NCBI RefSeq assembly: GCF_036588685.1
Contig: NC_086375.1
Span: 26,040,001 to 26,104,000 of the forward strand
Length of the DNA stretch: 64,000 nucleotides
Source of the DNA: Mytilus trossulus
Taxonomy: Eukaryota
Direction of reading: 5' to 3'
How positions within the stretch are numbered: the stretch's first letter is position 1; every line of letters starts with the position of its first letter. The notes below the pieces were generated by a model, which was given only the letters and a program-made list of their open reading frames with translations, did no database searches and was not told where the DNA came from. Position numbers and translations under genes: made by a program. Shown here in pieces: positions 5,549 through 58,259 of this stretch.

Positions 5549-8500
5549 ATGGCTACCTTAACACTGACTTTGTTGAAATTTATACCTGTTTTCATTATAC
5601 TATTCATAATAAAGAAACTGTTTGGATTATATCAAAGAAGAAAGGCACTACAAAGAGCATTGAAGGATTTCCCTGGTCCGGCCCCACATTGGTTATGGGG
5701 CAACATGAAGGAGGTAAGTTAAATACCGAATACACCGTCATAAATTTTTACATTACAGTTAGATTATCGTGTAGAATATGGCATTATTTATATTGAAATA
5801 GAAGGAGATTCCTAATGAGATATCTCCACAGGAAACCCAAAGATGTAGAATTAAACAATTGTAGGTCACTGCGATTGAGACAATGGCCTTCGGCAATGAG
5901 CAAAACCTATACTGCATAAATTATAAATGGCTTTCTGCCGTTCCTATTTGATATACTGAGTACCGAATTTTAAAATTCCATTCGTTCATCTTGGTCTATA
6001 AATTTGATTTCTTAATTTTGTGTCGTCCTAATTATGCATAAAATATGTCCCAATGGACGACCAGACGAAACATTCAAATATGACAGAGTTTTTGGTGTTC
6101 AACTCTTCCCCTTAGACATTCATAAAGTATGGGAGGTATAAAGAAATCTTACTAGAAAAATCAGTATTGAAAAAATGCATTATTGAATAATATTGAAACT
6201 ATAACAATAAAAAAAATAAAAAGAACGAAAAAACATTGCACCTACTGAAGCCGGTCTTAAACCATGCCTCCTTTCATTGTACAAGTGACGGCTGTATAGC
6301 AGCATCCCTACAAGTGCAGAAAAAACATGACCAAGTGCAGCGATATATGTAATGAATGAAACGAATACATTATGCTATGTTCTACTAACAACAGTGCATG
6401 CATAGCGGGTAAAATCTCTATTGAGGGATATGAGAAATAGCTTGTAAAAATGTTAAACACTATGTTTTAGCTGACCGGAGATTACCAAGGGATGCTTCGG
6501 ACTGTAGAGTATGCCAAGAAATACAATGGAGCATTCCCTGTATGGATGGGACCAACAGATGCCTTCTTGATGACTGTCAATCCTTCCACTGTTAAGTACG
6601 TCTTATCAGGAACAGGTACTGTGCACACTCAAGACGTTTTCGTATGTTATGGGGTTGTTTTGCCTTTTTTCTTCTTTTTGTTATGTGTTTTATGTTGTTC
6701 TTGTTTCTTTTTATTTCATGTTTGACTATTTTTGGTTTACTATTTTAAGTATTTTTTTGTGTTACTTTTTGTTTCTTATCTTATAATGATTCTGTAATTT
6801 CATTTTTTTTCAAAGTAAAATAGTATAGTTGTATGTAAAGTAGATTTAAACAGTTTAGATATTTTTTTCTTTTTAGTAAGCACTCATTTATGTCATACAA
6901 ATATGTCCAGATAATCTAATATCATGGTCTTTTGGCTTCATTGCAGTTTGTTTTCATAAAGCCATTTATTTTTACATGTTCTTCATGTAGATGTTAATAT
7001 CTCTGTATGAATAACAGCATGTCTGTCTTTTGAATCTATGTTTTGAGAGGACTTGGACGTGTATTCTCAGAACGATTTTCGATTTTATGCTTTGTCTTTT
7101 CATTCATGAAATGTAATACTAGTAGTAAAAAAACGAAATTAATCGTGTGTTTCATATCTTACAGATCCTAAAGATGAATTTTCTTATGCACTGATGAGGC
7201 CATGGATCGGTAAGTTTATGCTCAAAGAAAGTTAAACGCGAGGGAAGATAACGATTTTGTTTTTGGCATCACGCTTTTTATGGTCCAATTTTGAAAAAGT
7301 TCATGATGAAAGCTAGTGATATTATACATGGACATTGGAAAATCAAATTCCCTTTATTCTAAAGCCATAATTTCATTAAGGCCAGTGGTCTTTTTACTTA
7401 TACATTGTTATTAATGATATTATTTTCTTGGCAAAAATGTTTGCGTAAGTTTTATCCAACCCAAATGATTTTCCTCAGGCCAGTAACAAGTATTTTAAGT
7501 AGTGACCTTTTTTAGTTGATTCAACATGCTCATCTTTTTTTGTCTATTTTTTTTGTATTCAAAGACTTGAAAGAGAGACGTTTATTAAGTGACAGGTTTG
7601 GCTAGCTTTAAAACTAGGTTTAGTCCACCAATTTTAATGCCTGTACCAAGTCAGGATTATGACAGTTGTTGTCCATTCGTTTGGTGTGTTTGGGTTTTTG
7701 ATTTTGCTATTTGATTAGGAACTTTCGTTTTGAAATTTCCTCGGAAATCAATAATTTTGTAATTTTACTTTTCTCTTTTTACAAGGTGATGGTTTATTAC
7801 TGAGTGGTGGCAAGAAATGGGATAGAAATAGACGTCTTATGACACCAGCATTCCATCAAGATATCCTCAAGAATTATGTGAAGATATTTTATGATTCATC
7901 TAAAATATTGATAGTAAGTATACCGCCATTTTAAACAAACATTTTTTCAGCGACAATTAAAAACATTTTCTATGAGTATAAATATTTTTCTCATGACAAT
8001 AGATATGATTATATAAATATAAGAAGATGTGATAAGAGTGCCAAATGAGACAACTCTTCATCTAAGTCACAATTTGTAAAAGTAAACCGTTATTGGTCAA
8101 AGTACGGTCTTTAAAAGGGAGCGTTGGCTCACACCGAATAGGAAGCTATAAGGTTCCCAAAAGTATAAAAATTAGTTATTTTTGTTTTCCTCGTTTTAGA
8201 TGCATACTTCACATAACACATATAAAATAAGTCTGTTTGATTGCATACATGTAAGTCTTAAGTGGAAAGAAGTCTAAACAAATTTAACATTTCTTACATT
8301 ATACCAGATAACCTTTACTCAACTGGAAATCAAAATGTTGAACCTGACTATATCCTTTTGTGCCAGTTTCTCGTAAGAAACTACAATATAGGTTGATTTT
8401 TTATTCATTAAGTACTCGTAAGAAACTACAATAAAGGTTGATTTTTTTAGTGATTAAGTATGAAACACTTTTCACTGGACGTTAATTTAACAACAGACTT

Positions 8501-11500
8501 TCGATCATTTCTATTCAGAAAGAAGAATTCTAACTCGAGTCATTCATAAGTTAATTGTGCATTTGAAGAAAAGCATTTAGTTTGGTATTATTAAAGATAG
8601 GTAAGATATAAATGAATGAGACACAACCCCAACAACACAGAAAAAGTAAACGACTTATGTATACGTGTATGCATGCAAACTTGCTATAATTATGCGGTAT
8701 GGATTTGTATAATTGTTGGATGCCGTACGGTGACCTATAGTTGCTAACATCCTTTGAACTTTAATATAGTTGTCTCATTTGGAAATCATAATACATCTTC
8801 ATATTGTATATTCACATGGATCAAAATATTTATTTCAGGAAAAATGGAGGGAAACGACAGAACCAGTAGAAACTTTTCATTACATCAGTCTTCTTACCTT
8901 GGACAGTATGATGAAATGTCTGTTTGGCTACAACAGTGACTGTCAAAACGAAAGGTACGACAAAGTTAATCCGTTTCCCACCCAAGGAAAGTAAAACTCA
9001 TGTACAGTTTTGCGAATGTATGATACCGTCTTCGAAGTCCCCTTTCCTATAAATATCGCTAACATAGCTATTTATTTACAATACATCTTTGGCGTTCAAA
9101 TGTTCAAGTTTTAGCGTTAACGTTCTTGATGATTTTGTGTCTAAAGAATCCATTCGAACGCGCGAAATTAACAACGTGTTAGCACTGCTGGTGGACTGTT
9201 AATCCCCAAGGTTTCGATTACTAAAATAATTTATAACCTATTTTGTTTCTACAATTACCACAAGCTGTCCTGATCGTTAAAAACTTTTAAAATTTAAGGT
9301 TTAAGATGAAGGTAAATCCAGAAAAGGTGCTTCGAAGCACACACTTTATAATGTGTTATTTTTATTTACCACCAAATATTTCCCCGTTCAAAAGTTGCTG
9401 CATAGATTTCCCTTTATATTAGAGCCTTTTGTTTTTATCGATCAAGAAAGGCTATTAAAATTCCTGCAAAAGCAGTTTTGATCTCATCAGTTTGGTATAT
9501 ATGAATATAGAATTGAACATAAATATAATGATAGAATACCTTTATTTCTAGTACAAGACATCCATATATACAAGGAGTGTATGATGTGTCAGAGCTTATA
9601 GTAAAACGGATAACAAATCCATTTCACCACAACCCATTTATCTACAAATTTACAGAAAATGGGTAAGTAAGGAATTTTGAATACCTTTACAGTCGATTGC
9701 ATTGAGTGTGTATGTAAGGGTAAAATCTTTGGTTAGCTTGCTTGCTTACTGAACAGTGAAGTCATTATTAGGTTATGTAAACTATCCTCCTTTAATTAAG
9801 AGTAGATAAGCCGACAGATAACAAATCAATTTCATTATATGTCTGCATGACTAGTCTACCTCGAAAGGAGAATAGTATACCTTACATTATAATGTCTTCA
9901 CGGTTCAGATAACAAGCAATCTAACCTAAGATATTACCTTTTAGAGATACACGCTCAATGCAATCGGCTGTAAAAAGGCTTAGAAGAATTTCAGTTCTGA
10001 TCCCATGTACGTTATTTGTCCTGGTCGGTTAAGGACCTTTTGTACTTTCATATACATATCATCTTCTATACTTTCCCGTCTGTTTACAATGGGGAAACAT
10101 TTACCAACGTTCATGTCAACCCATCACTGCGTTAGCATCTATTGATTATGGTTTTGACGTTGTTTTGATCTTTCCATTCGTATGATAATGAACATTCAAA
10201 TAAATACATTTGTATTTCGAGCCTCTTAAAAATCACAAAAATACTAAGCTCCGAGGAAAATTCAAAACGGAAAATCCAATACATTAAACGGATGCTTAAA
10301 AACTATCATATTCCTGACTTGGTACAGGCACTATTTTCTTATCTAGAATATGGTGGATTAAACCTAGTTTTTAAGCTAGCTAAACCTGTCACTTGTATAA
10401 TATCTTTTCGTGAGTTTGACTCAAATTCGTGGAAAAAGTTTCATATGGATAAAAGATTTATGTTTTTAGTGGAAAGATGAAATGTTGACCTTTTCTTTAT
10501 TTCAGAAAGAAATTTTACAAAGCTTGTGAAGTAATTCATGAACATTCATCGAAAATAATATCTGACAGAAAAAAGCTGTTACGAACGGAGGAAAAAGGCA
10601 GTAGAAACACAGACTTCTTGGATATTCTTATAAATTCGAGGGTAAGATTCATTTACAACAACAAAAATGTAGAGTAAGGTATCATATGTTTAATTGGCTT
10701 ATATTTCAAAGTGAAATTATTTGAAGAAGTACTGTTAAAAAGCAGTGGAAATTTCGAACTAATGTGGAAAACGGAAATAATGTGTCGTATACTTGTAAAA
10801 TCTAGTTTCTAAAAAATAGAGAGCAATATGACTTTAATTGACAATATGTATACAGACATTTTGGCACCAATTAAGAGTTATCGTATAGATATTTTGTTAT
10901 CATCTGATTCAGTTCGCGATTTATTGTTACCGATTCTTAGTATTTTAAAGTGAACGTAAAAGAAGGGCTCATTGTTAAATGCGCATTCATAGAATCAAAT
11001 TAATTTTGGTGTCTGGTAGTTTTTTTGTTTCTTTATTATTTGATTTGTTTGTTATTGCTGACGTTTGCGATGCAGATTTATATCTTAAAATCTCGCACTG
11101 ATTATTTGTTACGCTAAATGGTGCATTAACGGTATCTTTGTCACTAATAAGTTCTATATGATATAAGTCAGTATAGCCCTTTAATTCAGTAGTTCTTGTT
11201 GTTTGTTGCTGTGCAACATATTTGTTTTTCGTTCATTTCTGTGTACACAAGTTAGTCCTTTAGTTTTCTCATTAAAATTGTATAAATCATTTCGGGGACC
11301 TTTTGTAGCTGACTATGCGGTATGGGCTTTGTTCATTGTTGACCTATAGTTGTAAATGTCATTGTCATTTGTTCTGTTGTGGAGAGCTGTTTCAATTGCA
11401 AATATTGAACATCTTTTTACATCATTGTCTTTTGATTTATCATTTTGATTTTAATAACTTTCCTACTTTCGGCCAAAAGTAAAAGTTTCCGGAATCCTAT

Positions 11501-14500
11501 GCTTTTCTGAATTTTCGTTTTAGCATTATATGAGGGTTTAGATGGGGTTAAATTATTAAAGAATAATGCCCTTAAAAATGAAGATTAGAGAATAACGGGC
11601 TAAAAAAATAAAGATTAGAGAAAAAAGGGGTTATTTTTTTAAAGATTAGAGATAAAAGGGGTTATTTTTTTGAAGATTAGAGAAAAAAGGGGTTATTTTT
11701 TGAAGATTAGAGAAAAAAGGGATTTGACAACAAGAGATGAATGATTGAGAGTTTATTATTATTCTGACTTTATTATAAACCTAGCAATTATTTGTTTGTA
11801 CAGGACGAGGATGGAAACGGAATGTCTGATACAGAAATACAAGATGAAGTCGATACATTTATGTTTGAGGGTCACGACTCTACCGCTAGCACTTTGTCAT
11901 GGTGTCTCTACAACCTCGCTAAACATCCAGAATACCAAGAAAGAATCAGAGAAGAAGTGAAAGAACAATGGGGAAACAAGGATGAAATTACCTGGTAAAT
12001 TGTTTTTAATAATATCTACATCACTGAACAGCTAAAATTGACGAGCCTTTTGGCTGAAACAACCTGATTAGTTTGGTTGGAAATTACTGAAGTGCGTTAT
12101 AAAGTAGCTGTTTATTTTTTGTTATTTAGATATGTCCATTCCTTTAAATAAGGACTCTGTCTTATATAGAACGACTAATATAAAAAAGAAGATGTGGTAT
12201 GATTGCCAATGAGACAACTATTCACAAAAGACCAAAATGACACAAAAATTAACAAGAATAGGTCACCGTACGGCCTTCAACAATGAGCAAAGCCCATACC
12301 GCATATAGTCAGCTATAAAAGGCCCCGATAAGACAATGTAAAACAATTCAAGCGAGAAAACTAACGGCCTCATTTATGTAAAAAAATGAACGAAAAACAA
12401 ATATGTAACACATAAACAAACGACAACCACTGAGTTACATAAATAAATGTGGCGGGGTTAAACATGTTAGCGGGATCCCAACCCTCCTCCTAACCTGGGA
12501 CAGTGGTATAACAGTACAGCATAAGAACGAACTATAAAAATCAGTTGAAAAAGGCTTAACTCATCAGATAGACAAAAAATAAAAGTGGACGTGGCCGGGT
12601 ACTTATACATCCCGACACAAAAAGACACAATGAACAGATCTGAGAGTACTCGCAGTTATCTGACAGCTAGTTCAAAGCCATTAACAACTAATAAAAAATC
12701 ATGCCTCTAAGACTTAGCAATCAATCCGTACACATCCAACATACAATGGATTTAATGCCTGCGTCAAACTGTCCCAAATTTGACTCCACATGAAAACATC
12801 ATAAAGAAAAGGTTCAAATTTGAATGTGGTTGAAAAAAACATCGGGCCATCCATGATCATTCTTACGTCACTGCATGAATGAACACAAGTTGATTTCTCA
12901 GTGCCTCAGATTCCGGCAGCAACTTCATAAGCGGTAGCCAAATATTTGGCATTTCTCATTCATAAAATTGCCGAATTACCTTGTGAAGGAACATTTTCGT
13001 GTTGAATCCGTATGCCCATTTTATATCCCTCCGTAAAACCATCGTGTATGTAGAACTTCGTATGTCATTGCCTGACCTTTTGTAGGCATCGAACTAGTTA
13101 ATTTCATTTCAATTTTACCTATAGTAGGAAAGAAAGGTTATGCCGTATCAATTCAACATGCAAATATGTATAAAGATAGATACTATATGAATTTATAACC
13201 AGTTAATTTCATTTTTTCTAATGAAGGGAAGACATCAACAAACTGGAGTATACTTTGATGTGTGTGAAAGAAAGTATGAGAATGTTTGCACCAGTACCAA
13301 ATATATCTCGGTGTACAGAGAAAGATATACTATTACCCGATGGTCGGCTGATCCCAGCAGGTATTTGTTCTAGTATTTTGTATAATTTGTATAATTTGTA
13401 TTACAGCCGATTACTTTGAGTGTGTAGATAAAGGTAATATATTTGGTTAGCTTGCTTGCTACCTGAACCGTGAATCATTATTAGGATAAGTAAACTACCC
13501 TCCTTTAAGAGAAGACTACTTCGAAAGAAGGGTAGTATACCTTACCTAATAATGGCTTCACGGTTCAGCTACCAAGCAAGCTAACCAAATATATTATCTT
13601 TAGCTATACACTCAATGCAATCGGCCGTAATAGATTCAGCTCGGTTCCTTGGCTTACCTAGTCATTTGTTGTCGCTCTTTGACTTATAAGTATATCATTA
13701 TGTATACGGGCTTCCCAAATATTGTTGCTCTTTGACTTATAGGTATATACTCATGTTTACTGGATAAAAATAAAACGCACAATTAAATGAAGATGGATAC
13801 AAATAAGCTAGCCTCACATTTACTATTATTTCATATCTTTCTTTTGACATTAGTAAATACATGACTTGCATTTTGTGTATTGCCCTAAGATTTCACATCG
13901 TTGTTTTTTTACTTTATTTTAGGGGTTCGGATGGGAGTATCTATTTATGCTCTTCAAAGAAACCCGGATGTTTGGAAAGATCCAGAGGTACAGTTGTTAT
14001 AGAATAGATTTTGTAAAATGACTTTAACTTGCTGTTTTTTGTTCTTTGCAGATATTCACATCTTAAATTCACTAACACATGACATAACTTAAATATAACT
14101 GCAAAAATTATTGTAGTTTTTTCTTTATCATTTCAGATATATGACCCTTCAAGATTCTCATCAGAAAATAAAGTTTCAGCTTTACAATTCATGGCATTTT
14201 CAATGGGTCCAAGGTAAGGATCAGTTAACATGGTCTCTCGTCTGCATTAGGTCACGTGCATTGTTGAGTCAACAATTTCCTTTTTAAAACTGAAAATATA
14301 AAAAACAATATTTAGAAAAGATTGTCGCTTGAAAATAACACCACGCTAACATACAGTACATGCATTCCATTTAACTGTTTGTGGTTTAGTTAAATTGTGA
14401 AGCAATTGATGCATATGAAATAAATCGGACCGAAATCCATTGGTATATCATTGGAATATATTTTTGATGTAGTAGACAAATGTGTTCGATTAATATTTTT

Positions 14501-15499
14501 TTTAATGTATTGTACTCTTAACATGCATTTAAAATTGACTGCTGGACTTTCAAGCAAGACTAAAATGTGTTTTTCGACGTAATCGGTATAGTTTCGGTTT
14601 GTGCTCTTTGAACTTAAGGACGCTTTACTATGGCAACAGAATACGCACGCTCGAAAATCCTTTCTGTGATTGGACAAAATGCTGTCATGGTGGGTGATTT
14701 GGTTGTGTTTGAAAAAACGTCTCGCCAATTATATTGTGATGGAAAGCAAGTGAAAAACTATGAATATTTGAACTAGATCTTACAAAGATTTATATTTTTA
14801 TTAAAATAATTGATTCTCCAATAGCTCTTTGCAACCATGACAGCTGTTTATTCGGGACAATTATATAATTTTTAATGTAAACTTTGTTGTACGAACGTAC
14901 ATGACTTTTAGAACGCACCTACGCATGTGAGATATCATCACAATATTCTTATATATTATTCCCTTAATATAACCAGACTTAGTAAAGAATTTCTTGTTGT
15001 TACATTCAGATGGAAATTTAAGTCATTGTGCTTCTGAAGGTTATCGAAATGATAGTTTTAAACATATACTCATCGTCGGATATATTTTTTAAAGATAGTT
15101 CTTGTTTTTATATATATTGCTTGGATGTTTTTGTTTATTCTTGAAAAAACAAAGTATAATACACACGACAGCAACATCATAACAAAACAAAAACCCAAAT
15201 AAAAACAAAACATTTAATCGGAATTTTAGATAAACATTGAACTCTAAATTGTCATTTTTCGTTCTTTTGGGATTTCATCCTATTGAAGTTCACTCTAGGT
15301 CCACTTTTATCAACTTTTACTGATTTATTTTAGAAACTGTATTGGAATGCAGTTTGCGTTAACCCAGATAAAAGTAATTATTCCAATGATAGTCCGTAAT
15401 TTCCACTTGGATTTGGATCCTGAGCGACCAGCAGAACCTGAGAGTATGTTGATATTAAGGAGCAAGAATGGATTGTATCTTAAAGCGACACCAATATAA
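5549..15499 (+). CDS. Cytochrome P450, CYP4 clan (CYP4F/4A-like), 12 coding exons, 492 aa
   Basis: GT-AG exons: 5549-5713, 6471-6615, 7165-7209, 7786-7913, 8839-8954, 9552-9662, 10506-10641, 11804-11994, 13227-13360, 13923-13987, 14137-14213, 15334-15499 (1479 nt, open frame). Motifs: N-terminal TM anchor, [12 protein letters not shown] hinge, [14 protein letters not shown]-helix, [14 protein letters not shown]-helix, KESMR (ExxR), DPSRF, FSMGPRNCIG heme-Cys. AATAAA signals follow near 15640-15695. Confidence 0.95.
9687..9973. mobile_element. Fold-back (palindromic) MITE, TTACAG...CTGTAA family
   Basis: Long inverted arms (ttacagtcgattgcattgagtgtgta...tacacgctcaatgcaatcggctgtaa). Relatives at 13401-13630, 27093-27466 and a partial copy at about 19538-19690. 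Confidence 0.8.
11580..11722. repeat. Minisatellite, about 30-bp unit (aagattagagaaaaaaggggttattttttt), about 5 copies
   Basis: Directly visible tandem copies in the CYP4 intron just upstream of exon 8. Confidence 0.85.
12180..12760. mobile_element. Abundant interspersed non-autonomous repeat (aagaagatgtggtatgattgccaatgagacaac family)
   Basis: A long inverted copy lies at about 58860-59415. Partial copies lie near 8020, 11180-11400, 21680, 38130-38310 and 59630. Confidence 0.7.
13401..13630. mobile_element. Fold-back MITE (same family as 9687-9973)
   Basis: Palindromic arms ttacagccgatt...aatcggccgtaa. Confidence 0.8.
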
Positions 15500-15900: not shown

Positions 15901-15983
15901 AATCAGTTTACAATAAAATAGGATGTAAATGCAACTAAGTACGAAAAGGTACTAACCAAAATATCGAACCCCAAAGTATATCA

Positions 15984-25850: not shown

Positions 25851-25884
<34 letters not shown>

Positions 25885-41585: not shown

Positions 41586-42240
41586 TTATAGGCTGGTTTC
41601 TAAACAGTATATATCACATGAATTATTATAAAATCTTCCAGTTTCATGACTATATTGTTGTACATATGTAAATATCTCTGTGTTTTCGTCAATATTTAAG
41701 TCTGAGCAACCCTGTAGTAGGACATCAAGATTGACATTTTCAAAGTTACTTATTTTTTGAAAGAGCTCATATCTCTGATAAATGTAAAAATGGACAAACA
41801 TAAAAGAAATGAATATTATCTTCTACTGGATCTCCACATGCACACATAGAGCTGTCCGACAAATGATCACAGAAGAGATGATCTTTTAGATCACTAGCCT
41901 CATTTCTTAATTGGCAGTGGATTATATTAACTTTACGTGAACCAGTGGAAAAGAAAACAGGACAAGGACTTATGTCCTCATTCAGTTTTCTTTTAAATCC
42001 TGTGAAGCTTAAAATATTTTTAACTTCTCCATCAAGGGAATTCCTCTTTTCAAGAGTATGTGGAATAAAACTGTTTTTATAGGCTGTGGTTCGACACTGA
42101 GGAGTTTTAAATTTCCTTTTTTTTCTCAAACCATACTGGTCATTAGTGTTTGTATATGACAAGATATCAGCAGCAATATAATTAGGAATATCTCCAGAAA
42201 TAGTTTTATGACGAAACAATAATTTGTTTTTCTGACGTCA
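41586..42240 (-). mobile_element. CR1/L2-group LINE 3' fragment (frameshifted ORF2 C-terminus)
   Basis: RTTAYKNSFIPHT...NSL and HCQLRN...L...CACG..VEDNIHFFYVCP are typical ORF2 C-terminal motifs. A frameshift separates ORFs 41767-42219 and 41586-41801. Confidence 0.7.
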
Positions 42241-44233: not shown

Positions 44234-45427
44234 TCATTGCCTTTGTAGAGTATAGTACTGGAGTATCCCACTCTTATCGTCAGCAATGCCAATACAATGT
44301 TTAACAACGAAGTTTTCCATCAAAGAAAAGTTAGCAGACGATAGCAAGACCGGTGTATGTCCAAATATTACCATGTATCCACCTTTCTTAACTGTCGGCA
44401 AAAGAGCACCAATGAGTTGTTCTGCTTCGGTGGACGTAACAACTTCAGAATTGAGAAAACGAATAAAGACAACATCAGCTGACGCTGGAGATATTTTTGG
44501 TTCCATGGCGTTCCCACAGTGTACCTCATCGACCCGAGTTTTAGAAAATCCTACCATTTGCTTGCTGAGATCTTGTCCAATGGTATAACTCTCGGGAAAT
44601 GCCTTTTTCAAAGTTGACAGGAAGACGCCAGTTGAGCAGGCCGGATCAAACAGTACCAACTTTTGAGTGCTCAGAGTTTTTAGAAATTTAATGGTGTACG
44701 CTCTTATCCTTTCTTCCCCACATCCAAGCATTACGTCAAACGCATCATCAACAACCCAACCTTCGGAAGGTGAGCATAATTCCTTCCTTGTCGATTCCCG
44801 CAGAAGAGAAAATGGAAAAACAATCTCTACGTTTTCTATTTTATGGTCAGTGATGTCTTTCATTATTTTGAGCTTTTCACCGTTCTTCAACGGATGATAA
44901 AATACATTGACGAATGTTTCAGTTATCCTTTGGTCGGAGAATACGCCTAATATCATACCCGCGGAAATAAAGCTGCAGTGGATCTCTGGAATCCTATTTT
45001 GTATCCACAAGTCCGAGAGGATCTTTCTTCCCACTAGTCTATATTTCGATGGACCTATATTAAATGTTAAGAAGAATACACTTTGCGGAAGGGCCCAGTG
45101 CTTCTCAGTAAGTCGCTCCAACTTTCTATTATTGACTTCTGTCCAGTTAACATCGTCAACAATTTTGCAAGAGTTTGTAATGTGGAAGGTAACATAGCGA
45201 TCTAGTTCACTTTTAAGAAGCTGCAAGGTACTCCTGTCTGACGGGTGTTCTCCCGACTGGGATAAAGATTCTTCTAATAATGCCTGTGCATTTTTCAACT
45301 GTCCTTCCGCAAGAAGTCGCCGAATTTGTAAAAATTTCTCTCGGAGATTATCATCGTACATTCCTTTGAAGATCCCATCGTAGCTTTTAATAGCATCTGT
45401 CAAAACGGGTGCCTTCTTGTCGGCCAT
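44234..45427 (-). CDS. Intronless class I SAM-dependent transferase, probable 3-amino-3-carboxypropyl transferase (Nat/isonocardicin synthase-like, ACT), 397 aa
   Basis: Single ORF from ATG 45427 (MADKKAP) to TGA 44234. C-terminal Rossmann fold with LFDPACSTG (motif I), GQDLS (motif II), ADVVFIRFLN and KKGGYMVIFGHTPVL. Minus-strand AATAAA at 44195-44190. The family assignment is from recalled motif resemblance, not a database search. Confidence 0.8.
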   Translation of the reverse strand: MADKKAPVLTDAIKSYDGIFKGMYDDNLREKFLQIRRLLAEGQLKNAQALLEESLSQSGEHPSDRSTLQLLKSELDRYVTFHITNSCKIVDDVNWTEVNNRKLERLTEKHWALPQSVFFLTFNIGPSKYRLVGRKILSDLWIQNRIPEIHCSFISAGMILGVFSDQRITETFVNVFYHPLKNGEKLKIMKDITDHKIENVEIVFPFSLLRESTRKELCSPSEGWVVDDAFDVMLGCGEERIRAYTIKFLKTLSTQKLVLFDPACSTGVFLSTLKKAFPESYTIGQDLSKQMVGFSKTRVDEVHCGNAMEPKISPASADVVFIRFLNSEVVTSTEAEQLIGALLPTVKKGGYMVIFGHTPVLLSSANFSLMENFVVKHCIGIADDKSGILQYYTLQRQ

Positions 45428-47839: not shown

Positions 47840-50800
47840 ATGGCTGATTACCACCAGATAGTGTCTTTCTGTTGTATATTCTGTTTAAAACTAATTTGTT
47901 ATATCATTAATGTGGTAAGTTTTTTTAACATTTAAACTATAAAATACGTGTCACAAAAATACAAAATACTTATGTTTACATGCTTATACATTTGTTTAGT
48001 TCTTATGAAATAATATGCGTAGGCCAGAACAACTTTATTCCTGTTTTCACGATTTCTTGTCACGAACTTTTTCTGTGCACTGTAAAGGAATGCTTTTCTT
48101 TTCGCCTACTGATTGCTTTATTTGCTTATACTACGAATGCACATTTATGTAGTTCTATGAACACGTTATGCTAAAGGTAAATATTCTCTGCTGTTATCCG
48201 CCAAAGACAGGTCCTGTGTTTTATATCTGTTTTTTATTTAGAAAAGGCGTGGGCGGGTAGGTGCTACAACACTAATTCGCCTGATTATTAGTTATTCAAG
48301 GGAAATCGTCTTCTGAAAGGCGTGTCTCACTGTCTCTCCTCAACCTAAATTTTCCACTGCCAAATGAGTGCAAAAAGTTATCAAATCTAAATGTTATCTT
48401 TTGAATGTGCAGCATATAAATCTGTTCACGGTTAAAATTTAAGGTATAAAAGAACACACCAGTTGTCTTGTTGTTTGTTACTGTTTGTCATGTTTAATAT
48501 ACACGAAAACAAACAATAATTTACTAATATTTTATAGTTTTTTAAGGTGGTACCAAACACTACAGGGGGGTAACTCTGTAAAATCAGCTAAACGTTTTAA
48601 TTACGTTGTGTTGTTAAAAGAATATTAAGCTTCTCAATGATCAAAATTAGTGTTTGTCAAACTGCTATATAACCAGTCACGTAATTTTTCTGATAAAATG
48701 GTTGGTTCAAATTTTTTGAAATTTTAATATTTTTGTCAAATGGTCAAAGTTAATACTTTGTAAAAATTTTATGAACATTAAACGAGCCAAATCAATTTTA
48801 GTTAAAGTGTTGAGTACCACTTTAATATAAACGAAAACAAACACTATATATATAATGTACTAATATTTTATAGTTTCTTTAGTAGAAAAGTATGTTGAAG
48901 AGACCAAAAACATGTACATATGATATAAAGCATACGGTCAATATAGAATGATTCGGCAAAAATGTACATGAACATTTGCTGTAGAGAACCAGGTTAAAGT
49001 TTCTATTGATATGTCTGAATCAACACACATTTTGCTTTCGTTAAAAGTTTTGACTTTCTCTCTTCTTTTCTAGGTTCCATGGTTAAGTAATGGTTCCGTT
49101 TCAAAGCCGTCCTGGATTATACAGTATCTGTTACAGAAAACGTTTGAAGATGACAAGTTGAAAAAGTTAGAATTTCTTACACAAATTTACCACAAGCAAG
49201 GTTTATTTCGTTTTGACAGTAAAATCTATATTTTCAACCAGAAGCTAGCACAAACAGCTATCAACAAGTTGGAAAAAGGAGCAGAAAATTACTTAGACAA
49301 CTCTCCACTTAAAGATACATTTTTAGGTTCATCTCAGAAAAGTCCCGAAACAAGACGTGCTATCGCATCCTTGTTCAGAAAAACATCTATAGAAGAAAGG
49401 GCATCTTCGATGACAGAAGATATTAAAAAGATGTGTTTGAAAATGAAGCAGCAATCACTTAGATCTGTAAATATAACTCATTGGTCGCTACGTCTAGCGT
49501 TAGACATTGTCGGTCACGTGCTTTTGCAGTTAGATCTGAATGCTTTGGACGGCGAACAAGATGAATTATTAGAGTGTATGGTGACAATTCTCCATAGGTG
49601 TTATGCTTTAAATGAAATTTCAACAGACTCTGACGAATTTAAGCAAGCAAACGAGGGACTTGATCGGATTACTTCAAATATACTCAAAGATGCTCTAGAA
49701 AAAGACGATACTACAATACAGAAACGGCTGGTTGTTCAATTGCACGAGGCCTGTGGATTTGAAGAAGTGAGTATTTCCCTGTAGTTATAAAATCGCATAG
49801 TTTTCACAGGGACTTTCTATACTCCCTGTTTTTTACTCCCAAGTTCATCTGTATTTGTGTGTGTAAAGGAAGAATAGACAAGGGAAAGAATACTACACAA
49901 ACACACAACTTTAAATTTTATTATGTCAAGTCAAATATTGAAAACCTACCAGCAAGTCTAGAATAAACAAATAGATTTCTTTTGCCTTTCAATATTGAAA
50001 CACTTCATTAATCATCTTATTTTATAATGTAACAAATAGGCTCCTTTTTATTATTTCAGGCTAAGGACAATATGAAGCTATTTCTGATGGCTGGAACAGA
50101 AACAACAGCTTCATCTATTCCCGTGGTGTTCTCATTGTTAACTGATAATCCTGACATTCAGGTAAGTGCTATCTTTTCGGAATTTGGTTATGGAATTAAT
50201 TTTTTTTATTGAGTATGCGACTGTCACATTTCCGTCTAACCTTGGAAGAGTTGTCTTTCCCTATGGTAAACCTGAATTTATTGACTTCTAGATGTCAATT
50301 TGCCTTTCTTTGTAGGTTGTTTGCTGTTACTTCAATTTGACGTAGATGTTATGAAAGGATTTAGGGCACTTGTGGAAATAATTAGAAATTGAAATAAAAT
50401 AGATCTTATTTAAATAAAAGTATATGTTTATAGGTGATAAAGATAGTTCCAAGTAAAATATTATATAAAGGTCAAATGATTCGTTGATATAGGAAAATAA
50501 AATAAGAAGAAAACACATAAAGAAAATAGCGAATAACAAGCATATCTTAGATGCATGATAAACAAAAATAGTACAAGTCAAGAACCTCATTAGTTATTTG
50601 GCACGCGTTTAGAAGGTTGCTAGGTCGACGGACAGATGTGTATGTCGAATTGATATTACATCCAAGGTTATAACCATATTCACAGAATGTGTAGATACTA
50701 CAGCATCATGAATATTCAGTAATATATTTAGGCACACAAGATTGTATAAATAACCAATCAAAAAGTTTAGATACGAAGATTGACGTACACAAGATATTAA

Positions 50801-53800
50801 TTAAAATTTAACAAATCTTTAATTATCAATTATAATAGAGATCGGAAATTGAAATTCTTCCAAAAATATTATTTTATTTAATTTAAGAAATAAAAGTCCA
50901 AATGCTTTTCAAAAACAAATAAATACATTTTGCATATTATGAAGCAATATAAGTTTTGGCAACACATTCCAAGAAGCTCAATCTTGTCTGGGGAACAAGA
51001 ATGTCGGGTAATGAGTAGTGACTATAAAAGCAAATATAAGTCTACTGCCCGTACATTACATTACAATCCTTGTTCCAACCAGCAAATTGAGTTGTCTTAT
51101 TTATTTCATTAAAAAGGTAAGTTATATAATGTTAATTAAAGTAATTTAATAAAATAAATTAATTGCAGATTAATAGGAAATAATTCAATAAATATAATAG
51201 GTTTAATTCGAGCAATATTTGAAACAGAAATATATTTGTTATTGTTAAATGTTATCTATATTTAATCTGTATGATTTATGCACTGTAATATTTTACGATA
51301 AAAAAGAAAAGAAACATTACATTACATTACATTACAATCCTTGTTCCAACCAGCAAATTGAGTTGTCTTATTTATTTCATTAAAAAGGGTAAGAAGGCGC
51401 GAGTCCCACTCTCGCTGCCAAGCAAGTCCACAACAACGACATGTAGTCCCCAGATGTGCAAACATCCTTCTACCGACAAGAACTGTAGAAGAACGCAGAA
51501 AACAAGAAGAGACAAATCAACAACATGTAATCAATTAAGAAACCACCAAAGACAATTCAAATACAAACATTAACAAGCGACCTCCAGGTTCAGTTTCCAA
51601 CAACAATAATACAAAACCCTTCACAACAATATGGCGGAGGACCCAAACCTTCTTTATGACAACAGAGGACGAGACGATTTAAACTACCTTATCAGGAGTA
51701 GACAGAAATTTAAAGGCCATGAGGAGACAAACAGTACCCTAAGCCAATTCATAAAAATCTACCTATGTGATGTTAGGAACGATACCATACAGGTCAATCG
51801 CCACTTGAGAATAGCGACTACAGAACCTCAATTCAGTGAGCCCGAATTTCAAAACAATCCATGACGATTCCAACAATTCTTACGGAAACAGATACAATTA
51901 GTTACCCATGCACTATTGTGACAACCCGAAGGATCAAACTAGAACAGATTTTCAAACCACACACGAACAATATTAATGTTTTCTAACAATATTTCCAATA
52001 TTATCTATGGACAATAATTTCATTTCCAACTCGTATTATTTTTGTATTCACATGTACGGTAAGACGGTTGATTTTACTTATTTTCTCTCTACTAAAACAA
52101 TGATTTAAAAAAATTAATGATAATAATAATAAAGAAAATTAAAAAGAAAATTAAAAATAAAAAAAAAATAGATAAATAAATTTTTCGTATTAAAATTTAA
52201 AGAAAGTAAATTTGAATACTTCTAACCATTTAAAAAAAAAAAAAAAAATTGTCACATCATGCAATTCAAATACAAAAGTATTATATAATCTAACTGGTAT
52301 GTACATGTATCCTTTTGAATAGTTAATTGAAATATTATAAGGTGAACGTTTAACTGAACCTGTATTTTTTAAAATCATCACGGTGACACCAATTACTGAT
52401 TTAATCTTTCAAATCGAACACTATATTTATTCTAAATGTCTTTCCTATAGTTTTTAAGTTGATATTCAGTAAACAAACCATATTTGTTTATAAAATTGCA
52501 TTACTGACCACTTGATGCTCTCATGATTCATATCTGATATACAAGTTATATTAAATTGTTTTACAAAAAGAGATGAAACAATCGAAACTTTAACTAATAT
52601 ACATCCATAATTCTCCTATATCAAGGAAATAGAATTTAAAAGTACAAAAGTACAAGTTTAAAGTATACATCAAAAGTGGAAGCAAAACTTCCCACGCTTA
52701 TTTATTATCTAAGATATAACTTAAATCGAACAATCAGGAAGATCGTACTACTGACATACTCATTTAATCTATAAACAAAATAAAGTATTCACCTTTATAA
52801 TGATGCACCTATTCCGCCAGATAACATTTTAAAAATAAATATCATTCGTTCTGGCCAATGCATTGCCAACTATCAATAATATTACAAATGTAGATACCGT
52901 TGTAAAAAAAAGGAATACATCAGAGATAATATTCGTATTTCAAATACATCTATGCGTTCTTATTGAAAGGTTTATTACAATATAACATAGCTAAACAACA
53001 AAAAAATCCTATGAATGCAGGCAGTACGAAATGATAAATTAAGTTTTATACAACGTTTTCCAACCCAATGCTAAACAAAAACAAAAACAAAATAAATTGG
53101 GAGAAGTTTTATTTCAAATTGCAGTACCAGAAGAATTACGGAATAGCATAAACATATATTAATTGCATTTCACGATAATTCTTTCCACCAAGGTGTTATA
53201 AAAAAAAAATATGAAGCTATAAAAGCTAGATATTATTGGCCTGACATGACAAGTTTACAATCACGTGACATTGTGTAAAACATGCCAGGAAGTAAAATCA
53301 AGTTAACAAAAAAATGCGAGCGCCCTTACATCCTATGCCGGTGGTAAACGTTTTTGAACGTATTCATGTCGATATCCTTGAAGGATTATGCAAATTCCGT
53401 TCTGGAAATTCATTTATCCTTATTGGTCACAGACAGTCTAAATCACTGGTCGGAGTGCTTCCCCCTGAAAAAAAACAGGAGGCGAAATATATAGCAGACG
53501 TGTAATATTAAGAAATGGTTCCCCGTTATGAACAATGAGGGAACATATTCAAATTAGCTAAGTCCTTAATAGCGTCATGCTCAATCAGAATAGGACACGG
53601 AGATCAAGTGTTGAAAAGTGTTATGACGGCATTTCAAATGACGACAGTCACCCAATCTTTAGGATACTCGCTTTTAACATGCATATCAAATTGGGGAAAG
53701 AAATGACGTAAATAAACTATTGATACTCAATTGATTCCCACACAAAAAAAAAAATGGAAAAAGCACCTTAAGATTCATTGATGAACTAATTAAATAGGTC

Positions 53801-54389
53801 AAAATTATCCATAAAACGGCTAAAGAGAATATAACAGAGGCGCAGTTATAAAAGTAAAATATATAAAGATAATAATAAAAGTAAATTATTTATAAAAAAG
53901 TTATAGTTGAAGATTTCATAATGAAAATAAATAAACAATGAAGATTCGGTCCGGTAAGAAAAAGACACCGGAACCCTAACGAATGGGCCCTTAATATAAG
54001 GTACGGGGCGTATCAAATGATACGTACAAAATTTGTGAAACTGCAGTCACATAACATGATGATACCATTAGTTTTTGCTAATAGGTTGAAACCGTACAAA
54101 GATCCACGAGATTACAGACCACAGGCTGATAATCAATCGGATCCGCGTATTGATAAAAAGATTAACACACAAAGATGAATCAGACACAAAAGTCTATTCA
54201 AAATTTGCGTCAGATCAATCAGTACAGCAATCACAGACACGTGATACGAGTATATATAAACAAAGAGATAATATTAATTTTGATAAGAAATCAGACAATA
54301 CACCTGACGGTACTAAGAATAGTAATAACGATAAATCATCTAAGAACATTTGGTTTGAAGAAACTTATTTTTTTTAAATAGAATTTATA

Positions 54390-54421
<32 letters not shown>

Positions 54422-57400
54422 CATTACTTGATACAATGGACGGAACGTTTAAGAAAAAAAAGACGATAGTGAAAATTGAGTTTTAGCTCATTCATCAAAA
54501 GAACTGTTTAAGAGGACGACTTTCAACGTAATGACAAATTACTTTCTGCCGAAAACGTTATGTTGCTTATAATTTTGAAGTTACGGATCCTAACTTCGAT
54601 AATTTATATTGTAGGTCTGGCAAGGGTAATATGAATTATGTTACTACATTTTTAGTGTACTTCTCAGTTCTGACCATCTCAATGCTTGATGAAATAGTAT
54701 AAAATTTGCAATATTAGGTCTGTTTTAGAAAAACATCAATCTGGACGCATTATGATGTGTCATTGATAAAATAGTATAATTCAAGACTACATAATATAGC
54801 AAGAAATACTTAAACTAAATCGACAAGGATATATATAAATATATTAAAGATAAGATACATTCATAACAAAAATAGACAGTGAAATGAAACTATATAAATT
54901 TATAACAGAGATCATTATAATGGTAAATAATTTGTCAAACAACTAAACATGCGTTGGTAAAGTAAAGTAAGAAGGTCAGAGATAATAACATATGTTTTGA
55001 TAGTTAATCATCACTATATATATTTTTGGCACGCGAGAGAAATCAAGATAAGATTTTTCTAAACTGGCAGTTTGCCTTCAGAAACAGGTTGAGATTTCTG
55101 AACAATCTGTCATATAGACATTAGTTTAACTTTCATAACACATCAGAATAATAATAACATACATTTATTTGATAAAGATTATATTACTGTAACAATTCTA
55201 GCACACAAAAAGGAGGGTAGAAAAATTAAAGAATTAAAAATAATAAAAATGAAAATAAATCAAATGAAGTAAAAGAAAAGAAAAAAAAAGAGTAAAAATC
55301 ATAAAAAATCTGGTGGAATTCAAACAATCAAGTCCGATCTTCCTCTATATATATATACATAAGAAAGTATTAACATGTTCAATATAAACGTTATAACAAC
55401 CACGTTGAGTTAAATTCTCTATAGTTTAAATGACAAAAAAGAGAGAGAGAATATGTTATTTTATTCACTTGCATATGGAGTACATAAGACACAGATCTTC
55501 ATATGACTTATTTTCGCGTGTTGGAGTACATCCAAAGACAGATCTCCAATATTTCGCAGGTGGACTTTTGTTCCACGGAAGAGGATCGGCATAATAATAT
55601 TATTATTTTTCATTGTGCATGCATCATACAATTTGTGTATGTATATGTATTTGTGTTTCATTTATTGCAAAAACAGTTCATAGGAAAAATTAAATAATCA
55701 CAATTAATAAGATTCAAAGATTAAAGTTAAATTCAAAACAAACATGTGAAAAAAAAATGAAATCAGGAGATTTCAAACTTAACAAGGGGGTAATGTTATG
55801 AAAGGATTTAGGGCACTTGTGGAAATAATTAGAAATTGAAATAAAATAGATCTTATTTAAACAAAAGTATATGTTTATAGGTGATAAAGATAGTTCCAAG
55901 TAAAATATTATATAAAGGTCAAATGATTCGTTGATATAGGAAAATAAAATAAGAAGAAAACACATAAAGAAAATAGCGAATAACAAGCATATCTTAGATG
56001 CATGATAAACAAAAATAGTACAAGTCAAGAACCTCATTAGTTATTTGGCACGCGTTTAGAAGGTTGCTAGGTCGACGGACAGATGTGTATGTCGAATTGA
56101 TATTACATCCAAGGTTATAACCATATTCACAGAATGTGTAGATACTACAGCATCATGAATATTCAGTAATATATTTAGGCACACAAGATTGTATAAATAA
56201 CCAATCAAAAAGTTTAGATACGAAGATTGACGTACACAAGATATTAATTAAAATTTAACAAATCTTTAATTATCAATTATAATAGAGATCGGAAATTGAA
56301 ATTCTTCCAAAAATATTATTTTATTTAATTTAAGAAATAAAAGTCCAAATGCTTTTCAAAAACAAATAAATACATTTTGCATATTATGAAGCAATATAAG
56401 TTTTGGCAACACATTCCAAGAAGCTCAATCTTGTCTGGGGAACAAGAATGTCGGGTAATGAGTAGTGACTATAAAAGCAAATATAAGTCTACTGCCCGTA
56501 CATTACATTACAATCCTTGTTCCAACCAGCAAATTGAGTTGTCTTATTTATTTCATTAAAAAGGTAAGTTATATAATGTTAATTAAAGTAATTTAATAAA
56601 ATAAATTAATTGCAGATTAATAGGAAATAATTCAATAAATATAATAGGTTTAATTCGAGCAATATTTGAAACAGAAATATATTTGTTATTGTTAAATGTT
56701 ATCTATATTTAATCTGTATGATTTATGCACTGTAATATTTTACGATAAAAAAGAAAAGAAACATTACATTACATTACATTACAATCCTTGTTCCAACCAG
56801 CAAATTGAGTTGTCTTATTTATTTCATTAAAAAGGGTAAGAAGGCGCGAGTCCCACTCTCGCTGCCAAGCAAGTCCACAACAACGACATGTAGTCCCCAG
56901 ATGTGCAAACATCCTTCTACCGACAAGAACTGTAGAAGAACGCAGAAAACAAGAAGAGACAAATCAACAACATGTAATCAATTAAGAAACCACCAAAGAC
57001 AATTCAAATACAAACATTAACAAGCGACCTCCAGGTTCAGTTTCCAACAACAATAATACAAAACCCTTCACAACATAGATCGCCAATACACCTCCTTTAT
57101 GTATTTGGTCCATACTGTTTCACACAAGAGAACGCCAAATTGTATACTCATAAATGTTCAATTATATCTTACTAGTATTTATTTTTTTAAATTTTGATCG
57201 TCAAATTTAAAGTTTTCCTACAAATTGACCAAACAAAAGAAAACATTCCAGCATACAGCAATATCAGAGGGCTGTAAGATTCGCCAAAATTTAACACAAT
57301 CTACCATTAATGAAACATTTTTTTTTCGAAGGAAGAACTAAGAGATGAAGCAATAGATCGCTGGTCTGAAATGATGGCGGAACCTACCACGTCTTTACCA

Positions 57401-58259
57401 AAAATAGAAAGTATGATTAAAGAGGTCCTAAGACTTTATCCAATAGCACCTTTCATTAGCAGACAAAACAATGTCCCTGTAAATCTGGGAAACATACACT
57501 TGGATGAACATGTAAGTTTCAACATATATAATGCAGTATATTTGTAAACCTTAGCTTCAACAGAGAATCAAGTTTCTGCAATGCTAGCTACTTTTTTTGT
57601 TATTCTAGGAATAATGGTTAATCCAATGGAAAACGCACATAAATGTTATTCGCCATTTACTTCAAGATTAAAATCAATATTTTTTTCTTGCAGTAATTGA
57701 TATAAAAACTGCGTCTGCATATTGATCGAGTCCGAATGGCATCAATACGTGTAACATTTGTTAATCAGAGGTCTATTTGACACACCAAAAACCTCTAGAA
57801 AAAATGTGTTATATCTTTATAGATTATCAAAGAATTATTACATAACACAAACATGTTCCATATTTATTTAGATAAAATTAACTTGGATTATATAATATTT
57901 CTAGTATTTGCTCATTTTTTGACAATATAATTTCATTTCAGAGTGATGTCGTTATTTTCACATGGGGAATTCACAGATCTCCGTACCTGTGGAAAGATTC
58001 AAAAGTATTTAAACCGTTCCGCTTTCTTGGAGAGGAAGCTTTGCATTCAAACATGTATATACCATTTGGAGCAGGATCTCGAGTGTGTATTGGACAACAT
58101 ATGGCGGTTCTGGAACTGCGTTTAGCTATAGCAATCTTACTTCATACTTTTACATTTTCAAAGAACCAATCCACACCAGACTTAAAGTTTGTTGTTGACT
58201 GGGCCCATGCTGTTGTGCACCCAGATAAAGATATGATGTTTACTTTAGAGAATGTTTAA
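47840..58259 (+). CDS. Divergent cytochrome P450, 5 exons, 455 aa (family not assignable by eye)
   Basis: Exons 47840-47914 (MADYHQIVSFCCIFCLKLICYIINV|gtaagt), 49074-49766, 50060-50161 (LFLMAGTETT), 57332-57511 (KEVLRLYP) and 57942-58259 (FKPFRF, PFGAGSRVCIG). Total 1368 nt, open frame, all introns phase 0 and GT-AG. Confidence 0.88.
48546..48821. mobile_element. Kolobok-like MITE (TTAA TSD) in P450 intron 1
   Basis: ttaa|ggtggtaccaaacac...gtgttgagtaccact|ttaa. Confidence 0.7.
50347..57075 (+). mobile_element. Non-autonomous Gypsy-type LTR retrotransposon (6729 bp) in intron 3 of the divergent P450
   Basis: 1282-bp LTRs at 50347-51628 and 55794-57075 (TGTT...AACA). TSD TAGA at 50343-50346 and 57076-57079. 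PBS-like TGGCGGAGG at 51632 and PPT AACAAGGGGG before the 3' LTR. Decayed integrase remnants (YYWP, CKTCQ, FERIHVDIL) at about 53100-53700. Confidence 0.93.

What the first reader, a model, noticed from the sequence alone, without database searches (positions are those of the whole stretch)
5549..58259. Candidate animal biosynthetic gene cluster: CYP4 + FMO + FMO + SAM-dependent ACP-transferase + orphan P450
Seen: the only five host genes in 53 kb are all intact small-molecule tailoring enzymes from three unrelated folds (P450, class B flavoprotein monooxygenase, class I SAM transferase), with no housekeeping gene between them. They have spliceosomal introns and animal TEs, so this is host DNA rather than a symbiont contig. 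Known: Nat-type enzymes transfer the 3-amino-3-carboxypropyl group of SAM to a phenolic oxygen. N-hydroxylating FMOs and P450s can convert amino acids to aldoximes and nitriles. The mollusc metabolites bursatellin and the mussel oxazinins carry an aryl O-CH2CH2-CN ether on a beta-oxygenated tyrosinol. Inference: the transferase makes the homoserine ether, the FMO(s) and/or a P450 decarboxylate it to the cyanoethyl ether, and a P450 does the benzylic hydroxylation. From memory, a mollusc 'bur-ox' pathway (NRPS FmtATR plus ACT) has been reported without the nitrile-forming step being demonstrated; this needs verifying. This locus would supply candidates for the oxidative steps.
Basis: partly seen in the sequence, partly recalled or inferred. 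Interest (0 to 1): 0.95.

Follow-up and report, generated by a model that had tools for sequence, protein, structure and literature searches.

The report
Known mussel bursatellin-oxazinin (bur-ox) gene cluster

Summary
All five genes exist at the stated coordinates and look intact. They are a 12-exon CYP4, two tandem 2-exon FMOs, an intronless isonocardicin-synthase-like aminocarboxypropyl transferase (ACT), and a 5-exon orphan P450 head-to-head with the ACT. Between them I found only transposon remains. The window is Mytilus trossulus chromosome DNA.

A single 1629-aa ORF with Fmt-A-T-R domains, the FmtATR NRPS, lies 13.3 kb beyond the P450 stop, outside the window. The locus is therefore the bur-ox cluster itself. 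Venugopalan and Schmidt (JACS 2025, PMC11869996) already described that cluster in Mytilus as fmt-atr + act + p450 + two fmos. They already proposed the P450 for the hydroxyl group and the FMOs for the nitrile. A 2026 paper (PMC12833800) reports rediscovering the cluster computationally.

Accession and locus-tag order supports the same gene order in M. coruscus, M. galloprovincialis and M. edulis. It also supports ACT-P450-FMO linkage in Potamilus and ACT-P450 linkage in Tegillarca. Shared scaffolds link ACT and FMO in Ruditapes and Mizuhopecten.

The only item not in the paper is the flanking CYP4, and I could not test whether it belongs. The oxidative chemistry is still inference.

Verdict: real, correctly read, already known, low novelty.

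The parts
5549..15499 (+). CYP4-family P450 gene that flanks the cluster. My model has 12 coding exons: 5549-5713, 6471-6615, 7165-7209, 7786-7913, 8839-8954, 9552-9662, 10506-10641, 11804-11994, 13227-13372, 13923-13987, 14137-14213 and 15334-15496, then the stop. It codes for 496 aa. Whether it belongs to the cluster is untested.
   Evidence: The exon ORFs were read. Five exons match the Pfam p450 profile. Exon 8's best solved-structure match is CYP4B1, E 1.2e-18. GT-AG junctions that keep the frame were found. The N-terminal 19-aa hydropathy mean is 2.45. The own genome has no close paralogue of exon 8. The model was not checked against RNA or a full-length orthologue.
22660..24813 (-). FMO-A, a class B flavin monooxygenase of 561 aa. 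CDS exons are 24184-24813 and 22663-23715, with the stop at 22660-22662. One CDS intron.
   Evidence: Pfam FMO-like scores 274 and 286 bits. Exons are identical to RefSeq M. trossulus XP_063425561.1 (P0426). The motifs GAGVAG, FTGRVLHTHDY and GIGNSA are present.
30456..32804 (-). FMO-B, a class B flavin monooxygenase of 540 aa. CDS exons are 32190-32804 and 30459-31463, with the stop at 30456-30458. One CDS intron, at the same position as in FMO-A.
   Evidence: Pfam FMO-like scores 264 and 305 bits. Exons are identical to RefSeq XP_063427512.1 (P0432). It is 53-63% identical to FMO-A. The motifs GAGVAG, FKGKVMHTRDY and GIGNSG are present.
44234..45427 (-). ACT, a SAM-dependent 3-amino-3-carboxypropyl transferase of the isonocardicin synthase type. 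397 aa, intronless CDS.
   Evidence: The only significant solved-structure match is isonocardicin synthase 8zhu, E 2.5e-39. The shared motifs are D(P/A)ACSTG, TIGQDLS, HCG and GHTPVL. It is 91-94% identical to the ACTs of M. coruscus and M. galloprovincialis. Its mollusc homologues carry the name 'isonocardicin synthase-like'.
47840..58259 (+). The bur-ox P450, an orphan mollusc P450 family. 455 aa. Exons are 47840-47914, 49074-49766, 50060-50161, 57332-57511 and 57942-58256, then the stop. All introns are phase 0. It lies head-to-head with ACT across 2.4 kb.
   Evidence: Exons are identical to RefSeq XP_063427513.1 (P0413). The mollusc orthologues form one clade with 99% support. The heme motif is FGAGSRVCIG.
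50346..57047 (.). LTR retrotransposon remnant inside P450 intron 3. It is not part of the pathway.
   Evidence: Direct repeats of about 1.25 kb lie 5447 nt apart. There is an Integrase_H2C2 fragment at 53147-53275.
39565..43955 (.). Multicopy element with inverted ends, lying between FMO-B and ACT. It is not part of the pathway.
   Evidence: Parts of it match dozens of places on many chromosomes at 89-98% identity, the longest covering about 2.7 kb. Its ends match each other in inverted orientation.

Best explanation
The window is the Mytilus trossulus copy of the published bur-ox (bursatellin-oxazinin) biosynthetic gene cluster. The gene order is CYP4(+), FMO-A(-), FMO-B(-), ACT(-), P450(+), and then the FmtATR NRPS(+) 13.3 kb past the window's last gene.

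Shown for orthologues in the paper:
- The NRPS reductase part makes tyrosinols from tyrosyl thioesters.
- The ACT transfers the aminocarboxypropyl group of SAM to the phenol, giving the O-homoserine ether.

Inferred, both here and in the paper:
- One or both FMOs N-oxygenate the alpha-amino group of the homoserine ether. This gives decarboxylation to the aldoxime, then the nitrile (the cyanoethyl ether).
- The clustered orphan P450 puts in the benzylic hydroxyl and/or dehydrates the aldoxime.

The CYP4 is most likely a neighbouring gene with no role in the pathway.
For: NRPS. A single ORF of 1629 aa at G000:C3:26111583-26116472 carries Formyl_trans_N, AMP-binding, AMP-binding_C, PP-binding and NAD_binding_4. 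NCBIfam also finds an amino-acid adenylation domain and a thioester reductase domain.

ACT. It is homologous to isonocardicin synthase and belongs to the mollusc 'isonocardicin synthase-like' family.

Oxidases. There are two FMOs and one orphan P450.

The paper. It defines bur-ox as fmt-atr + act + p450 + two fmos in Mytilus. It says the organisation is conserved across sequenced Mytilus species, and it proposes these same roles.

Species. Contig C3 is 94,312,406 bp, the same length as the contig that carries the RefSeq M. trossulus proteins. Those proteins match the window's exons 100%.

Linkage, from consecutive accessions or locus tags and shared contigs:
- M. coruscus CAC5390677-680 run P450, ACT, FMO-B, FMO-A.
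- M. galloprovincialis VDI72201-204.
- M. edulis CAG2199367-369.
- Potamilus CHS0354_024259 / 024261 / 024263.
- Tegillarca KUTeg_012993 / 012996.
- Ruditapes and Mizuhopecten have ACT and FMO on one scaffold of 165 kb and 676 kb respectively.

Phylogeny. The linked FMOs and the P450 each form a mollusc clade whose branching follows the species tree.
Against: - No oxidative step has been demonstrated for any bur-ox FMO or P450.
- In scallops, and apparently in Dreissena and Haliotis asinina, the nearest P450 or ACT homologues sit on different contigs. Linkage is therefore not universal.
- The FMOs are ordinary animal-type, membrane-anchored FMOs and could have general substrates.
- Orthology to the biochemically tested McalACT is inferred from congeners. 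The M. californianus ACT sequence was not at hand.
Confidence: 0.9

Rival explanations
1. The cluster has six genes. On this reading the flanking CYP4 is a working bur-ox member. It might do the benzylic hydroxylation, the aldoxime dehydration, or a step towards the indole-bearing oxazinins.
For: The CYP4 is the immediate neighbour, 7.2 kb from the FMO-A stop, with only repeat-like DNA between. It looks intact. At E <= 1e-8 its exon 8 finds only two weak partial matches elsewhere in the genome, so it is not part of a CYP4 tandem array. Beyond it the flank changes to an array of B-box/TRIM-like ORFs.
Against: The paper's cluster lists a single p450 and never mentions CYP4. The gene has 11 introns and a standard microsomal anchor, like ordinary animal CYP4 genes. 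I could obtain no linkage or co-expression data.
Confidence: 0.15
2. The FMOs, and perhaps the P450, are general xenobiotic or amine oxidases that merely sit beside ACT and the NRPS. On this reading some other enzyme makes the nitrile.
For: The FMOs are typical animal FMOs with a C-terminal membrane anchor, and vertebrate FMOs are the closest non-mollusc relatives found. No activity data exist.
Against: FMO-ACT linkage holds in mussels, a unionid, a venerid and a scallop. The own genome has other, multi-exon FMO genes elsewhere (C2 array, C1) that could serve general roles. The linked FMOs form their own mollusc clade.
Confidence: 0.12
3. The genes are a chance neighbourhood of detoxification genes, not a biosynthetic cluster.
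For: P450s and FMOs are numerous in bivalve genomes.
Against: A single-place ACT, an Fmt-A-T-R NRPS, two FMOs and an orphan P450 lie within 54 kb. The order is the same in four other Mytilus species, and linkage recurs in distant bivalve orders. The activities of orthologous ACT and TR fit one pathway.
Confidence: 0.02

Closest known systems
bur-ox cluster of Mytilus (Venugopalan and Schmidt, J Am Chem Soc 2025, PMC11869996)
   Same: The gene set is the same: FmtATR NRPS, isonocardicin-synthase-like ACT, one unusual P450 next to ACT, and two animal-type FMOs. The genus is the same. The gene order matches M. coruscus, M. galloprovincialis and M. edulis, judged by consecutive accessions.
   Different: The species name M. 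trossulus does not occur in the paper's main text. The RefSeq model of the P450 has a hydrophobic N-terminus (19-aa hydropathy mean 2.35), whereas the paper calls the P450 globular. A CYP4 gene flanks the cluster here and is not mentioned in the paper.
Isonocardicin synthase (Nat) of nocardicin biosynthesis, solved as 8zhu, 8zhv and 9upq
   Same: It is clearly homologous over residues 113-374, E 2.5e-39. It shares the SAM-site motif D(P/A)ACSTG and other blocks. Both act on a phenol oxygen; for the mussel enzyme this was shown on the M. californianus orthologue.
   Different: The mussel protein has about 110 extra N-terminal residues, sits in an animal chromosome, and takes tyrosinols rather than nocardicins.
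Amino acid to aldoxime to nitrile routes of cyanogenic plants (CYP79 then CYP71) and the fern FMO oxime synthase. This comparison rests on my own knowledge.
   Same: The chemistry proposed for the homoserine ether is the same: N-hydroxylation of an alpha-amino acid, decarboxylation to an aldoxime, then dehydration to a nitrile one carbon shorter.
   Different: No sequence relationship was tested. This is a statement about how it may work, not about family membership. Here the candidates are animal FMOs and an orphan P450.

Membership tests
bur-ox biosynthetic gene cluster | Monomodular NRPS with formylation, adenylation, thiolation and reductase domains (FmtATR) | tested here: met
   A 1629-aa ORF at L021:2583-7472 carries Formyl_trans_N, AMP-binding, AMP-binding_C, PP-binding and NAD_binding_4. 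NCBIfam finds an adenylation domain and a thioester reductase domain. It lies 13.3 kb past the P450 stop, outside the window.
bur-ox biosynthetic gene cluster | Clustered isonocardicin-synthase-like ACT | tested here: met
   The ACT lies 2.4 kb from the P450 and 11.4 kb from FMO-B.
bur-ox biosynthetic gene cluster | One unusual (non-CYP-clan, 'bacteria-like') P450 close to ACT | tested here: met
   The P450 is head-to-head with ACT. Its orthologues form a mollusc clade with a hemichordate sister. Its affinity to bacterial versus animal P450s was not resolved in my tree (support 35).
bur-ox biosynthetic gene cluster | Two animal-type FMO genes in the cluster | tested here: met
bur-ox biosynthetic gene cluster | Gene organisation conserved in other Mytilus and other molluscs | tested here: met
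   The test was indirect, using consecutive accessions or locus tags and shared contig lengths.
bur-ox biosynthetic gene cluster | The animal contains bursatellin- or oxazinin-type nitriles | not testable with these tools
   The paper reports oxazinins in commercial mussels and clams. M. trossulus itself was not examined here.
Isonocardicin synthase type SAM aminocarboxypropyl transferases | Sequence homology to the solved enzyme, including the SAM-binding motif | tested here: met
   8zhu, E 2.5e-39, 262 aligned residues. The motifs D(P/A)ACSTG, TIGQDLS and GHTPVL are shared.
Isonocardicin synthase type SAM aminocarboxypropyl transferases | Transfers the aminocarboxypropyl group rather than the methyl group | not testable with these tools
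   This was shown for the M. californianus orthologue in PMC11869996. The window's ACT is 91-94% identical to the ACTs of M. coruscus and M. galloprovincialis.
Class B flavin-containing monooxygenases (FMO) | FAD GxGxxG, FMO motif FxGxxxHxxxY and NADPH GxGxxG/A, with a full-length Pfam FMO-like match | tested here: met
   Both proteins cover almost the whole 532-position profile (1-507 for FMO-A, 2-530 for FMO-B) across two exons.
CYP4 family of P450s (for the flanking gene) | Best match to CYP4 enzymes, a CYP4-type I-helix (EGHDxT) and a heme-binding FxxGxRxCxG | tested here: met
   Exon 8 matches CYP4B1 at 70 bits against 39 bits for the next family. FEGHDST and FSMGPRNCIG were read. The spliced model was searched exon by exon only.

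The most novel reading that the evidence does not exclude
The single-copy CYP4 that flanks FMO-A is a sixth, so far unreported, working member of bur-ox. It could supply one of the unassigned oxidative steps: benzylic hydroxylation, aldoxime dehydration, or a step towards the indole-bearing oxazinins.
Probability: 0.15. Interest if true: 0.45.

Novelty: already known. Interest (0 to 1): 0.15.

Why it matters
Animal-encoded biosynthetic gene clusters are rare, and bur-ox is one of the few with an NRPS. That value already belongs to the 2025 paper.

This window adds a clean, chromosome-level copy in M. trossulus with exact gene models, and it shows the cluster's limits. On one side lies a CYP4 and then a B-box/TRIM-like gene array. 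On the other side lies the NRPS.

Which enzyme makes the nitrile is still an open question. It can be tested directly with the four oxidase genes listed here.

Tried and rejected
Steps that did not work:
- The one metagenome scan, with FMO-A exon 2, returned only a 5.2-kb mytilid-like contig (L022, 77% identity). That is too short to show whether a CYP4 follows FMO-A.
- The paper's supplementary tables are not held, so I could not check whether M. trossulus is in its species list.

Scope limit: I sent no joined spliced protein to any search tool. The CYP4 model was searched exon by exon. For the P450 and the FMOs I used the full-length RefSeq proteins that the tools returned.

Weak or negative results:
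- NCBIfam has no model for the ACT. The only hit was BioC, far below its cut-off.
- NCBIfam hits of the P450 orthologue P0121 (ApyO 109 bits, albaflavenone monooxygenase 94 bits) are far below their cut-offs and name nothing.

Readings I considered and rejected:
- A symbiont or contaminant contig. Rejected because the window has GT-AG introns, lies on a 94-Mb chromosome and carries animal transposons.
- An undetected extra gene in the ORFs of 134-177 aa between FMO-B and ACT. Three of them lie in a multicopy element. The fourth (36525-36929) has no Pfam hit and lies in single-copy DNA.
Full report
**What is in the window.** The window is AT-rich animal DNA (GC 28-37%) with no N. It is G000:C3:26040001-26104000 on a contig of 94,312,406 bp, in a genome of 1.30 Gb.

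Pfam scans of the long ORFs showed three things:
- two FMO genes on the minus strand, each split into two large exons;
- an unbroken 397-codon methyltransferase-fold ORF on the minus strand;
- a piece of a P450 on the plus strand.

**The five genes.**

*ACT (44237-45427, minus strand).* It has no intron. Its only significant match among solved structures is isonocardicin synthase (8zhu, E 2.5e-39, residues 113-374). The two share D(P/A)ACSTG, TIGQDLS, HCG and GHTPVL. Its database relatives are mollusc proteins named 'isonocardicin synthase-like', followed by a rotifer protein and then bacterial proteins.

*FMO-A and FMO-B.* They match the RefSeq Mytilus trossulus proteins XP_063425561.1 (561 aa) and XP_063427512.1 (540 aa) exactly over their exons.
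- FMO-A CDS: 24184-24813 and 22663-23715.
- FMO-B CDS: 32190-32804 and 30459-31463.
- Each has one GT-AG intron, at the same place in both genes.
- Both carry the FAD motif, the FMO motif and the NADPH motif, and a hydrophobic C-terminus.
- They are 53-63% identical to each other.

*The P450.* Its exons are identical to XP_063427513.1 (455 aa). The exons are 47840-47914, 49074-49766, 50060-50161, 57332-57511 and 57942-58256. All introns are phase 0 and GT-AG. It lies head-to-head with ACT. Intron 3 holds an LTR element, with direct repeats of about 1.25 kb lying 5447 nt apart and an integrase fragment.

*The CYP4.* It runs from 5549 to 15499. I could join 12 exons through GT-AG sites into 496 codons, with FEGHDST and FSMGPRNCIG in place. 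Exon 8 matches CYP4B1 best. I built this model in a script only and searched it exon by exon. I sent no joined sequence to any tool.

**Species.** The contig length equals that of the contig carrying the RefSeq M. trossulus proteins, and those proteins are identical to the window's exons. The source is therefore Mytilus trossulus.

**Nothing else between the genes.**
- Twenty-four further ORFs in the intergenic and intronic DNA gave no credible Pfam hit, apart from the integrase fragment.
- Window 39565-43955 is a multicopy element with inverted ends.
- Window 34880-35446 is a multicopy element of about 565 bp.
- Small-exon genes in the remaining unique DNA cannot be ruled out without RNA data.

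**What lies outside the window.** I fetched 100 kb on each side.
- Downstream, a single ORF of 1629 aa starts 13.3 kb past the P450 stop, at G000:C3:26111583-26116472. It carries Formyl_trans_N, AMP-binding, AMP-binding_C, PP-binding and NAD_binding_4, and NCBIfam finds a thioester reductase domain. This is the FmtATR architecture.
- Upstream of the CYP4, the flank is an array of B-box/TRIM-like ORFs.

**The literature.** Venugopalan and Schmidt (PMC11869996) describe the bur-ox cluster of Mytilus as fmt-atr, act, one P450 and two fmos. They state that the organisation is conserved across sequenced Mytilus species. They show reductase and ACT activity for orthologues. They also write that they predict the P450 and the FMOs install the hydroxyl and nitrile groups. 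A 2026 paper reports that a synteny method rediscovered this cluster in mollusc genomes (PMC12833800). I found no later paper on the nitrile step.

The oxidases it offers as new candidates are already the published candidates.

- M. coruscus: CAC5390677 to CAC5390680 are P450, ACT, FMO-B and FMO-A on one scaffold.
- M. galloprovincialis: VDI72201 to VDI72204 show the same neighbourhood.
- M. edulis: CAG2199367 to CAG2199369 show the same neighbourhood.
- Potamilus: P450, ACT and FMO have locus tags two apart on a 420-kb contig.
- Tegillarca: P450 and ACT are three tags apart.
- Ruditapes and Mizuhopecten: ACT and FMO share scaffolds of 165 kb and 676 kb.
- Pinctada: all three genes are on one chromosome.
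- Scallops, Dreissena and Haliotis asinina: the nearest P450 or ACT homologue is on another contig. Linkage is common but not universal.

**Trees.**
- The linked FMOs form a mollusc clade apart from vertebrate FMOs.
- Within the pteriomorph bivalves, FMO-A and FMO-B are separate mytilid subclades, and FMO-A has a long stem.
- The same genome has other FMO genes with five or more exons, on C2 and C1. The cluster FMOs are therefore a distinct, intron-poor subgroup.
- The P450 orthologues form one mollusc clade that follows the species tree, with a hemichordate protein as sister.
- The P450 clade's position relative to bacterial and animal P450s was unresolved.

**How it most likely works.**

Shown for orthologues in the paper:
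- the NRPS reductase part makes N-formyl-tyrosinol and related tyrosinols;
- ACT makes the O-homoserine ether.

Inferred:
- an FMO N-oxygenates the amino acid end, which decarboxylates to the aldoxime;
- dehydration then gives the cyanoethyl ether;
- the P450 adds the benzylic hydroxyl and may also dehydrate the aldoxime.

I put the identification of the locus at about 0.95. I put the oxidase assignments at about 0.5 to 0.6.

**The CYP4.** This is the only element beyond the paper. It is intact, and at E <= 1e-8 its exon 8 finds only two weak partial matches elsewhere in the genome. It is the last gene before the flank changes character. However, it looks like an ordinary microsomal CYP4, and I could not test its linkage or expression. 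I rate its membership at about 0.15.

**Verdict.** The finding is the already published bur-ox cluster in one more Mytilus species.

Noticed in passing
window 47840-47914 (P450 exon 1): The RefSeq model's first 25 residues are strongly hydrophobic (19-aa Kyte-Doolittle mean 2.35, close to the CYP4 anchor's 2.45). This looks like a membrane anchor, whereas the paper calls the bur-ox P450 globular with no N-terminal transmembrane part. Exon 1 is conserved at 73-77% in M. californianus and M. coruscus.
   Followed up: partly
P0129 (Glandiceps talaboti, hemichordate): Outside molluscs, the closest relative of the bur-ox P450 is a hemichordate protein (36% identity over 88% of the query). It is sister to the mollusc clade with 100% support, on long branches. 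The bacterial hits cover much less of the query or are less similar, and my tree does not resolve a bacterial affinity.
   Followed up: partly
window 22660-32804 compared with G000:C2:96.27-96.34 Mb and C1:102.3 Mb: The two cluster FMOs have a single CDS intron, near Pfam profile position 209-210. Other FMO genes of the same genome have five or more exons and also have a boundary near that position. This suggests the cluster lineage lost introns.
   Followed up: partly
window 22660-24813 (FMO-A): In the FMO tree the mytilid FMO-A subclade sits on a long stem (0.69 changes per column), against 0.17 for FMO-B. This hints at faster change after the duplication.
   Followed up: no
P0121, P0418, P0421 (M. 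galloprovincialis scaffold of 627,705 bp): That M. galloprovincialis scaffold carries a second, divergent P450 copy. P0121 is about 72% identical to the window's P450, while the window's P450 is 93% identical to the M. californianus protein. This may be a local duplication or a divergent haplotype.
   Followed up: no
window 1-2600: There is a tandem duplication with a period of 1292 nt. Copies start at 1 and 1293. An exact run covers 44-880, and similarity of at least 80% reaches about 1100.
   Followed up: partly
L005-L008 and L010 (G000:C3:25.98-26.04 Mb): Upstream of the cluster lies a tandem array of intronless ORFs of about 570 aa with B-box zinc fingers, resembling TRIM proteins.
   Followed up: no
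P0001 (window ACT): The exact 397-aa ACT sequence is on record only from a 2,224-nt Logan contig, not as an NCBI protein. The neighbouring P450 and FMOs are RefSeq proteins. The RefSeq model of the ACT may be different or missing.
   Followed up: no
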